Part shown: in pieces, positions 21,801-22,274 of the stretch
Layout: each line of letters begins with the position of its first letter
Numbering within the stretch: position 1 is the stretch's first letter
From: Paragordius varius
Lineage: Eukaryota; Animalia; Nematomorpha
DNA length: 64,000 nucleotides
Assembly: GCA_964247055.1 (NCBI GenBank)
Contig: OZ176053.1
Span: forward strand, 4,650,001-4,714,000
Direction: 5' to 3'
Translations under genes and position numbers: made by a program
The notes under the pieces: generated by a model
What the model saw: only the letters and a program-made list of their open reading frames with translations
Told to the model about the DNA's origin: nothing
The model's database searches: none

Positions 21801-22270
21801 ATAAATAAAAACGATAAAGATACCTTAAAATAATCGCCAAACGACCAATTTCCCAACATTTCAAAAAATGTGTGATGATAAACATCCTTTCCAACATCAT
21901 CGAGATCGTTATGTTTCCCACCAGCTCGTATACACTTTTGAGTGTTGCAAACTCGGACATACTTAGCAAGATCGCTTTTAGGATTGGCGTTTCCCAAAAA
22001 TATAGGTTTAAACTATAATTAAATAAGTTTTATAAAACAATAATTGGGTAATTTTTATAAAGTAAATACTTGATTCATTCCGGCATTCGTAAATAATAAG
22101 GTTGGATCATCAAGCGGTATTACTGAAGACGAATAAACGTAATCATGCCCTTTGTTCTGAAAAAAATCTAAAAAAGTATTTCTAATTTCAGTCGCAGATG
22201 GATAATCTGGTTTTGATCGAATAGTCATCAGCTTAGTTATTGGACGTGAGACCTTAGACAAAAATATCAT
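6842..22270 (-). CDS. AARS1: Alanyl-tRNA synthetase, cytosolic (AARS1) type, 22 exons, 1057 aa
   Basis: Exons: 22270-22070, 22012-21824, 21588-21443, 17296-17105, 16781-16637, 16120-15975, 13440-13293, 12956-12827, 12464-12340, 12100-11911, 11594-11491, 11220-11041, 10735-10616, 10205-10068, 9844-9704, 9364-9252, 8669-8561, 8347-8213, 8117-7998, 7843-7754, 7229-7101, 7024-6842 (3174 nt, all GT-AG, frame continuous). Motifs: [43 protein letters not shown], editing HTGTH and CGGTH, RPDN and GFPLD. Confidence 0.97.
8936..9166. mobile_element. 231-bp palindromic Tc1/mariner-type MITE in AARS1 intron 16
   Basis: TA-CAGTC...GACTG-TA termini. Arms about 100 bp, with a perfect 55-bp inverted repeat 8978-9032 / 9070-9124. 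Confidence 0.75.
13680..15720 (-). mobile_element. Decayed hAT DNA transposon in AARS1 intron 6
   Basis: TIR C(A)GGGGTGTCCAACA. Perfect 8-bp TSD GTATAACA (13672-13679, 15721-15728). Transposase remnant [15 protein letters not shown] on the minus strand near 14650-14700. Confidence 0.85.
17581..20933. mobile_element. Foldback Tc1/mariner-type MITE (family B) interrupted by an RTE LINE
   Basis: TA-CACTGTGTGCAAAAAA ... TTTTTGCACATAGTG-TA with long inverted arms. An uninterrupted sister copy at 58190-59276 shows the empty site (gacctagtt|tttgaaatattgag). Confidence 0.85.
17696..19793 (-). mobile_element. 5'-truncated RTE-clade (BovB-like) non-LTR retrotransposon
   Basis: ORF 19485-18016 has RT motifs [15 protein letters not shown] and [10 protein letters not shown] frameshift near 18044 continues into 18022-17699 ([29 protein letters not shown]). 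The endonuclease tail (CSSDHELLV) near 19790 has stops. Confidence 0.92.
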
Positions 22271-22274
22271 GCAT
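22254..22274 (-). promoter_or_regulatory. Upstream ORF (MHDIFV*) overlapping the first AARS1 ATG out of frame
   Basis: ATG at 22274 lies 4 nt before the main ATG at 22270. It ends at TAA 22256-22254, upstream of the second in-frame ATG at 22228. Confidence 0.5.

What the first reader, a model, noticed from the sequence alone, without database searches (positions are those of the whole stretch)
22228..22274. Possible dual-targeted AlaRS: two in-frame ATGs plus an overlapping uORF switch
Seen: ATG1 (22270) adds [14 protein letters not shown] before ATG2 (22228, [19 protein letters not shown], which lines up with the start of cytosolic AARS1). The first 21 residues are basic and S/T-rich with no acidic residue. 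An out-of-frame ATG 4 nt upstream encodes MHDIFV* and stops 25 nt before ATG2. Established: yeast ALA1 makes both cytosolic and mitochondrial enzyme from alternative starts, while most animals use a separate AARS2. Inference: leaky scanning gives the mitochondrial form and uORF re-initiation gives the cytosolic form, perhaps with AARS2 lost.
Basis: partly seen in the sequence, partly recalled or inferred. Interest (0 to 1): 0.7.

Follow-up and report, generated by a model that had tools for sequence, protein, structure and literature searches.

The report
Possible dual-targeted AlaRS start, hairworm
The only alanyl-tRNA synthetase gene seen in this horsehair-worm window starts with two in-frame ATGs, and the 14 extra residues of the longer form look like a mitochondrial import signal; this may mean one gene serves both cytosol and mitochondria, but I found no RNA, relatives or whole-genome data to prove it.

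Summary
On the minus strand, ATG1 is at 22270 and ATG2 at 22228, in frame and 14 codons apart. An overlapping ATG at 22274 opens a 6-codon uORF that stops 25 nt before ATG2.

The gene is a multi-exon (at least 19 exons), cytosolic-type AlaRS (AARS1) running from 22270 to 6845. The genome is AT-rich and probably nematomorph.

Two in-frame ATGs alone are chance level: 21.6% of positions in this window have one. The long N-terminus is not chance level. It has net charge +5, no acidic residue in the first 21, and a strong amphipathic segment at residues 4-14. Only 0.4-2.5% of random extensions from this DNA match it.

One gene giving a mitochondrial form (ATG1) and a cytosolic form (ATG2) is therefore the leading reading, at about 0.45. 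This mechanism is known for AlaRS in fungi and plants and for ThrRS in C. elegans.

Three things are not shown:
- that ATG1 is on the mRNA
- that the extension is conserved
- that AARS2 is missing

A plausible 40-nt intron (22292-22253) would remove ATG1 and the uORF. The uORF "switch" is the weakest part of the reading. An earlier scan of other DNA of this genome noted ultra-short introns, which matters for reading this 5' end.

The parts
22254..22274 (-). Overlapping uORF. Its ATG is at 22274, 4 nt upstream of ATG1 and in the +1 frame. It encodes MHDIFV and stops at TAA 22256-22254. Start context is catATGc (-3 C).
22229..22270 (-). ATG1 plus the 14-codon extension [14 protein letters not shown]. 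Start context is tgcATGa (-3 T). GC content rises here from 15% to 35-40%.
22226..22228 (-). ATG2, the start of the short form ([16 protein letters not shown]...). Start context is ctgATGa (-3 C).
22070..22270 (-). Coding part of exon 1 of the AlaRS gene. Pfam tRNA-synt_2c positions 1-40 match residues 28-67.
22013..22069 (-). Intron 1, 57 nt, GT..AG. The exon 1 | exon 2 join at 22070|22012 is seen in a spliced RNA contig of a related hairworm (run X7).
6845..22270 (-). Whole AlaRS (AARS1-type) coding region in at least 19 exons. It contains the HxxxH and CxxxH editing motifs and a C-terminal DHHA1-like end. A LINE reverse-transcriptase insertion lies in intron 3.
22289..22321 (-). Further upstream ATG (22321), in frame with ATG1 but closed by TAA at 22291-22289 (MRSIFKSYIS*). 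It is a uORF only if the leader reaches this far.
22253..22292 (-). Candidate 40-nt 5'UTR intron (GTAAAAT...TTTTTGTCTAAG). If spliced, it removes the uORF ATG and ATG1 and leaves ATG2 as the only AlaRS start. Not verified.
   Evidence: donor score 2.6, acceptor 7.8 on a matrix built from 18 local introns
22232..22259 (-). Candidate 28-nt GT..AG ultra-short intron that would put ATG 22274 in frame with ATG2. Both splice sites are poor and it is 43% GC. Judged unlikely.

Best explanation
Exon 1 of the hairworm's cytosolic-type alanyl-tRNA synthetase gene carries two usable in-frame start codons.

- **Initiation at ATG1 (22270)** gives a protein whose first ~24 residues, up to the conserved core, form a short, basic, amphipathic matrix-targeting presequence. 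This form would be imported into mitochondria.
- **Initiation at ATG2 (22228)** gives the ordinary cytosolic enzyme.

Ribosomes reach ATG2 because ATG1, and the overlapping uORF ATG 4 nt before it, sit in weak contexts (pyrimidine at -3) and are scanned past. The 6-codon uORF may also draw ribosomes away from ATG1 and release them 25 nt before ATG2.

**Shown:** the sequence layout, the gene's identity, and the statistical presequence-likeness.

**Inferred:** that both ATGs are on the mRNA, that the long form is made and imported, any role of the uORF, and whether a separate AARS2 is absent.
For: 1. The layout is exact.
2. The gene is AARS1 type. Pfam tRNA-synt_2c matches eight exon ORFs. The exons are 65-67% identical to arthropod proteins named 'alanine--tRNA ligase, cytoplasmic'. 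The human cytoplasmic AlaRS is the best solved relative.
3. The long N-terminus has charge +5, no acidic residue in 21 aa, hydrophobic moment 0.79 over [11 protein letters not shown], and a phi-x-x-phi-phi motif (ITKLM). The ATG2 form has charge 0 and moment 0.34. Only 0.36% (strict) to 2.5% (looser) of 6,325 real stop-free 13-codon stretches of this window, fused to the same MTIRSKP, do as well. Multiplied by the 21.6% chance of an in-frame ATG, this gives about 0.1-0.5%.
4. Even the ATG2 form has 10 residues before the core motif. The mode is 5, and 85 of 97 animal AlaRS have 8 or fewer. This fits a presequence that runs on past ATG2.
5. ATG1 has -3 U, the same unfavourable base shared by the leaky first AUGs of Cryptococcus dual-AUG synthetases, AlaRS included (PMC7049704).
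6. There is precedent in Ecdysozoa. C. elegans tars-1 makes both ThrRS forms from two in-frame ATGs, with a uORF overlapping ATG1 (PMC10196762).
7. GC content steps up at ATG1.
Against: - No RNA reaches the 5' end. The only spliced contig starts at 22112.
- No hairworm relative of exon 1 was found in four large protein searches, so conservation is untested.
- The close relative X5 (9 differences over the 373 bases of its contig, about 97.6% identical) is too similar to be informative. Only 4 of its 9 differences were listed.
- Codon-usage score of the extension is ambiguous (0.2; coding/non-coding density ratio 0.94).
- ATG2 is not in a strong context. Three likely true starts in the window have a purine at -3.
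- A plausible 40-nt intron would delete ATG1.
- My presequence measures are home-made and were chosen after seeing the sequence. No validated predictor was available.
- From my own knowledge, well-studied bilaterians keep a separate AARS2.
Confidence: 0.45

Rival explanations
1. ATG2 is the only functional start. ATG1 and the uORF ATG are chance ATGs of an AT-rich region. They lie upstream of the transcription start, in a tolerated leader, or inside a short 5'UTR intron (22292-22253). The presequence-like look is coincidence.
For: - In-frame upstream ATGs occur at 21.6% of positions.
- 36% of random ATG-started 21-mers from this window also lack acidic residues.
- Codon score of the extension is indistinguishable from non-coding.
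- The candidate 40-nt intron has donor GTAAAAT (2.6) and acceptor TTTTTGTCTAAG (7.8). Such pairs occur only 10-35 times per 57.5 kb strand.
- The genome is rich in very short introns at gene 5' ends (earlier notes s1-313171 and s1-243091). Three were verified here in COQ4 and Derlin.
- Typical animal AlaRS have no extension.
Against: - The combined charge and amphipathicity of the extension is reached by only 0.4-2.5% of random extensions.
- The T-rich 'acceptor' may simply be the codons for Ile-Phe-Leu.
- GC content rises at ATG1, not at ATG2.
- The donor of the 40-nt candidate scores at the bottom of the training range.
Confidence: 0.35
2. ATG1 is the main or only start and every AlaRS molecule carries the extension. 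Either the extension is a weak signal that distributes one product between cytosol and mitochondria, or it is a lineage-specific N-terminal tail with no targeting role.
For: - ATG1 precedes ATG2, and ATG2 has no better context.
- Single-product dual distribution through weak signals is a recognised mode for synthetases (PMC7600831).
Against: - An out-of-frame ATG sits 4 nt ahead of ATG1.
- A fully imported AlaRS could not serve cytosolic translation.
- There are no data on protein N-termini.
Confidence: 0.12
3. A 28-nt ultra-short intron (22259-22232) is spliced out. This puts the ATG at 22274 in frame and gives MHDIF-LMTIRSK... as the true N-terminus.
For: - GT..AG ends, 28 nt, and 46-28 = 18 restores the frame.
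- Introns of 20-33 nt are common at 5' ends in this genome (earlier notes).
Against: - Donor GTCTAAG scores -5.8 and acceptor -1.4 on the local matrix. 160 equally good pairs occur in 5.4 kb of non-coding DNA.
- It is 43% GC, against 9-28% for the three verified tiny introns.
- No verified local intron has C at +3.
- The resulting N-terminus has no recognisable feature.
Confidence: 0.03

Closest known systems
C. elegans tars-1 (threonyl-tRNA synthetase; PMC10196762)
   Same: It is an ecdysozoan single gene with two in-frame ATGs. The long form is mitochondrial and the short form cytosolic. A short uORF overlaps ATG1.
   Different: It is a different synthetase. In the worm, both isoforms and their import were shown experimentally and the uORF had little effect. 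Here nothing is shown beyond sequence, and the extension is only 14 codons.
Fungal dual-AUG AlaRS (Cryptococcus neoformans CNAG_05722, Neurospora crassa; PMC7049704)
   Same: It is the same enzyme: a weak first AUG with -3 U, a predicted presequence between the AUGs, and no separate mitochondrial gene.
   Different: In the fungi the second AUG has a strong context and ribosome footprints support both starts. Here ATG2 has -3 C and there are no footprints. The fungal spacing is about 69 nt at the median, against 42 nt here.
Yeast ALA1 and Arabidopsis AlaRS (Tang et al. 2004; Mireau et al. 1996, as cited in PMC7600831)
   Same: One AlaRS gene supplies both compartments through an upstream in-frame start.
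   Different: Yeast uses upstream non-AUG (ACG) codons. Arabidopsis uses two AUGs but with a longer presequence. Neither is an animal.
Human GARS1 and KARS1 (as summarised in PMC10196762)
   Same: These are animal synthetase genes that encode both cytosolic and mitochondrial forms.
   Different: GARS1 uses alternative initiation and KARS1 uses alternative splicing. From my own knowledge, no well-studied bilaterian is described as sharing AlaRS between compartments.

Membership tests
Eukaryotic cytosolic-type alanyl-tRNA synthetase (AARS1) | Class II AlaRS catalytic core (Pfam PF01411 tRNA-synt_2c) | tested here: met
   Eight exon ORFs match consecutive parts of the profile (positions 1-423), with E-values from 1e-9 to 6e-31.
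Eukaryotic cytosolic-type alanyl-tRNA synthetase (AARS1) | Editing-domain zinc motifs HxxxH and CxxxH, and a C-terminal DHHA1-type end | tested here: met
   NNHTGTH and FCGGTH align with the homologues. The last exon aligns with the DHHA1-bearing C-terminus.
Eukaryotic cytosolic-type alanyl-tRNA synthetase (AARS1) | Closest to cytosolic rather than mitochondrial AlaRS of animals | tested here: met
   The best full-length matches (65-67% identity over about 700 aligned residues) are arthropod proteins named 'cytoplasmic'. The best solved relative is human cytoplasmic AlaRS. No tree with AARS2 was built.
Dual-targeted synthetase by two in-frame AUGs (DualAUG) | Two in-frame AUGs with no stop between them | tested here: met
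Dual-targeted synthetase by two in-frame AUGs (DualAUG) | A mitochondrial presequence encoded between or across the AUGs | tested here: inconclusive
   My own heuristics (charge, absence of acidic residues, hydrophobic moment, Tom20-type motif) place it in the top 0.4-2.5% of random extensions. No validated predictor (TargetP, MitoFates) was available.
Dual-targeted synthetase by two in-frame AUGs (DualAUG) | Weak context at the first AUG and strong context at the second | tested here: not met
   ATG1 has -3 U (weak, as expected), but ATG2 has -3 C, which is not strong. Three probable true starts in the window have a purine at -3. The genome's own consensus is not established.
Dual-targeted synthetase by two in-frame AUGs (DualAUG) | Both AUGs present on the mature mRNA | not testable with these tools
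   The one reads call found no contig upstream of 22112 in RNA-like runs.
Dual-targeted synthetase by two in-frame AUGs (DualAUG) | No separate mitochondrial paralogue (AARS2) in the genome | not testable with these tools
   Only this window can be read. Earlier notes on the genome hold nothing on AlaRS, which is no evidence of absence.
Dual-targeted synthetase by two in-frame AUGs (DualAUG) | Extension conserved in related species | tested here: inconclusive
   No nematomorph relative was found. The X5 contig over this stretch differs at only 9 of 373 bases, too few to inform, and its three listed coding changes are all synonymous.
uORF-controlled re-initiation switch | The uORF is translated and its removal changes the ratio of downstream starts | not testable with these tools
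   Sequence only: 6 codons, weak context, 25 nt to ATG2, and no significant RNA structure (z = -0.75). The analogous uORF in tars-1 had little effect.

The most novel reading that the evidence does not exclude
Horsehair worms have lost AARS2, and their single cytosolic-type AlaRS is sent to mitochondria from an upstream AUG. An overlapping mini-uORF, or retention of a 40-nt 5' intron, sets the ratio of the two forms. To my knowledge this would be the first bilaterian in which cytosol and mitochondria share AlaRS. It would imply that hairworm mitochondrial tRNA-Ala is read by a cytosolic-type enzyme.
Probability: 0.2. Interest if true: 0.6.

Novelty: new member of a known kind. Interest (0 to 1): 0.4.

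Why it matters
If the long form is real, it extends the fungal and plant solution of one AlaRS gene for two compartments to a bilaterian animal. It would add AlaRS to the short list of shared synthetases in Ecdysozoa. It would also predict that hairworm mitochondrial tRNA-Ala keeps cytosolic-type identity elements (G3:U70). That would tie into the reported large-scale loss of conserved genes in Nematomorpha.

There is also a practical point. Gene models in this genome need care at 5' ends, because very short introns and AT-rich leaders make several start-codon readings possible.

If the long form is not real, this is an ordinary AARS1 gene with chance upstream ATGs.

Tried and rejected
1. **RNA evidence.** The single run search found DNA runs of the species and three small RNA-like runs. 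The single reads call gave only one 121-nt spliced contig from a roughly 91%-identical relative. That contig confirms the exon 1/2 join but does not reach the start codons.

2. **Relatives of the extension.** A word search with exon 1 and a search of every representative protein returned only generic AlaRS N-termini. The exon 2 search saturated with other animals. Three fetched loci (L001-L004) are other animals with ordinary MD/MT..LTAKE starts. A profile of a rotifer-like ORF plus window exons given by reference (A2) returned 120 full-length animal AlaRS, none of them nematomorph.

3. **AARS2.** Nothing appears in the scan's notes or in the hairworm genome papers. The Cunha et al. paper is not in the library.

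4. **Codon-usage test of the extension.** Uninformative.

5. **RNA structure near the starts.** None beyond shuffles.

6. **The bacterial promoter scan.** Irrelevant to a eukaryote, so I disregarded it.

7. **The 28-nt and 21-nt tiny-intron readings.** Rejected on splice-site scores and composition.

Full report
**What is there**

On the minus strand the sequence reads ...catATGcATGatatttttgtcTAAggtctcacgtccaataactaagctgATGact....

- The first ATG (22274) opens MHDIFV* and stops at 22256-22254.
- The second ATG (22270, ATG1) opens a 71-codon ORF that runs to the first splice donor.
- The third ATG (22228, ATG2) lies in the same frame, 14 codons on.
- Exactly 25 nt separate the uORF stop from ATG2.
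- Upstream of ATG1 the frame is open for only six more codons. An in-frame TAA sits at 22291-22289.
- A further in-frame ATG at 22321 is closed by that stop.

Every coordinate and peptide in the finding is correct.

**The gene**

Eight exon ORFs between 22270 and 12256 match consecutive parts of Pfam tRNA-synt_2c. Alignment with a rotifer-like AlaRS and with a termite AlaRS places at least 19 exons from 22270 down to 6845. These include the HxxxH and CxxxH editing motifs and the C-terminal end.

The exons are 65-67% identical to arthropod proteins named "alanine--tRNA ligase, cytoplasmic". Human cytoplasmic AlaRS is the best solved relative. The gene is therefore the AARS1 orthologue.

The window is 28% GC. 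A LINE reverse transcriptase sits in intron 3, a Ty3/gypsy element lies 1.6 kb upstream, and a COQ4 gene lies downstream. Earlier notes of this scan on other pieces of the genome call it a probable horsehair worm with many 20-33-nt introns at gene 5' ends. The published Gordionus genome has a similar GC content, 26.9%.

I verified three such tiny introns by homology in this window:
- COQ4, 25 nt at 6321-6297
- COQ4, 27 nt at 6199-6173
- Derlin, 23 nt at 30511-30489, which restores the FQIWRP motif

.

**Is the pattern more than chance?**

The two in-frame ATGs are not. In this window, 21.6% of all positions have an in-frame ATG upstream before any stop.

The nature of the extension is different. 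The long form has net charge +5 and no acidic residue in its first 21 residues. It has a hydrophobic moment of 0.79 over [11 protein letters not shown], with L4, V7, I11 and L14 on one face and K6, R9 and K13 on the other. It also carries a phi-x-x-phi-phi motif (ITKLM). The ATG2 form has charge 0 and a moment of 0.34.

I fused 6,325 real stop-free 13-codon stretches of this window to the fixed MTIRSKP. Only 0.36% reach the same charge, lack of acidic residues and moment. Looser criteria give 1.2-2.5%. The joint chance is roughly 0.1-0.5%.

These measures are my own and were chosen after seeing the sequence. I treat them as moderate evidence, not strong evidence.

Two smaller points agree:
- From ATG2 there are still 10 residues before the conserved core. 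The mode is 5, and 85 of 97 animal AlaRS have 8 or fewer.
- GC content rises from 15% to 35-40% at ATG1.

A codon-usage score for the 13 codons is uninformative: 0.2, with a coding/non-coding density ratio of 0.94.

**Start contexts**

All three ATGs have a pyrimidine at -3: the uORF C, ATG1 T, ATG2 C. Three probable true starts in the window have a purine there. That sample is far too small for a consensus.

The -3 U of ATG1 matches the leaky first AUGs of Cryptococcus dual-AUG synthetases. In those, however, the second AUG is strong, and here it is not.

No RNA structure stands out around the starts (z = -0.75).

**What could not be shown**

*RNA.* The listed runs are DNA of the species and of a close relative, plus three small RNA-like runs.
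- Only one 121-nt contig, from run X7, touches the gene. Its 43 nt of exon 1 end at 22070 and continue into a divergent exon 2 ([10 protein letters not shown] against [10 protein letters not shown]). This confirms the exon 1/2 splice but stops at 22112.
- The relative X5 has a contig over 22103-22475 with 9 differences. The four listed lie at 22148, 22178, 22184 and 22283.
- The three coding differences are third-position synonymous changes in the ATG2 frame (my reading). The other five were not listed. With about one change expected in 42 nt, the extension cannot be judged.

*Relatives.* Four large protein searches returned no nematomorph AlaRS.

*AARS2.* Only this window can be read, and neither the scan's notes nor the papers mention it.

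**Alternative gene structures**

I built splice-site matrices from 15 AlaRS introns and the three tiny introns.

- *28-nt GT..AG candidate (22259-22232).* It would put the uORF ATG in frame, but it scores badly: donor -5.8, acceptor -1.4, and 43% GC.
- *40-nt candidate (22292-22253).* It has a GTAAAAT donor (2.6, the low end of real sites) and a TTTTTGTCTAAG acceptor (7.8, mid-range). Pairs this good occur only 10-35 times per 57.5-kb strand. If spliced, it removes both the uORF ATG and ATG1, and a leader uORF would end 8 nt before ATG2.
- The T-rich acceptor of the 40-nt candidate is also simply the codons Ile-Phe-Leu-Ser-Lys, so the two readings compete for the same bases.
- Both could be true at once, with intron retention giving the long form. 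That is speculation.

**Comparison with known systems**

One gene making a mitochondrial and a cytosolic synthetase from two in-frame starts is well established:
- AlaRS in Cryptococcus and Neurospora uses two AUGs.
- Yeast ALA1 uses upstream non-AUG codons.
- Arabidopsis AlaRS uses two AUGs.
- C. elegans tars-1 uses two ATGs with a uORF overlapping ATG1, and that uORF had little effect.

The finding would be a new member of this kind. The new element is that the enzyme is AlaRS in a bilaterian animal.

**Verdict**

| Reading | Confidence |
|---|---|
| Dual use of ATG1 and ATG2 (best single explanation) | about 0.45 |
| ATG2 only | about 0.35 |
| ATG1 only | about 0.12 |
| 28-nt intron reading | about 0.03 |

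The specific uORF re-initiation switch and the loss of AARS2 are unsupported conjectures.

**Method note**

Exons were searched singly or as separate rows, given by reference, in alignment A2. Exon pairs were joined only inside scripts, to place intron borders.

Noticed in passing
window 6297-6321, 6173-6199 (-); 30489-30511 (-): Three ultra-short introns are supported by homology. Two are in COQ4: 25 nt, restoring ...[12 protein letters not shown]..., and 27 nt, restoring ...EGAQILQDKPRIN.... One is in a Derlin gene: 23 nt, restoring FQIWRP. Donors are GTAAC, GTAAT and GTTTT. Acceptors are TAG, AAG and TAG.
   Followed up: partly
window 17700-19557 (-): A LINE-type reverse-transcriptase ORF (489 aa from its ATG, 513 codons open) lies inside the 4.1-kb intron 3 of the AlaRS gene, on the same strand.
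   Followed up: no
window about 23900-28050 (+): A Ty3/gypsy-like retrotransposon has long open pol ORFs (845 and 307 codons). Near-identical short ORFs at about 23920 and about 27930 suggest its two LTRs. It lies 1.6 kb upstream of the AlaRS start.
   Followed up: no
window 22779-23900: This stretch is a high-copy repeat. Contig depth in the related run X5 jumps from about 3-6 to hundreds or thousands, with many rearranged joints.
   Followed up: no
run X7 against window 22070-22112: An RNA-like run with the same species label as the DNA runs is only about 91% identical in exon 1, and about 80% (24 of 30 bases) in the start of exon 2. The label probably covers more than one species. A 2026 preprint reports species misidentification in public Chordodes data; I did not check it against this case.
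   Followed up: no
protein P0327: A rotifer-like full-length AlaRS in the public collection has a 61-residue arginine-rich extension (MTRFVCFTVRRRQSRQ...) ahead of an internal MAMSANEVR start. This may be another animal AARS1 with a presequence.
   Followed up: partly
window 22381-22420 (-): A 40-nt patch of 47% GC (...GGGTCACGGCCATGTG...) sits in an otherwise 15-28% GC upstream region, about 110-150 nt before ATG1. It may be a promoter or leader element. It is followed by a TTTTGCAG acceptor-like site ending at 22328 (score 4.1).
   Followed up: no
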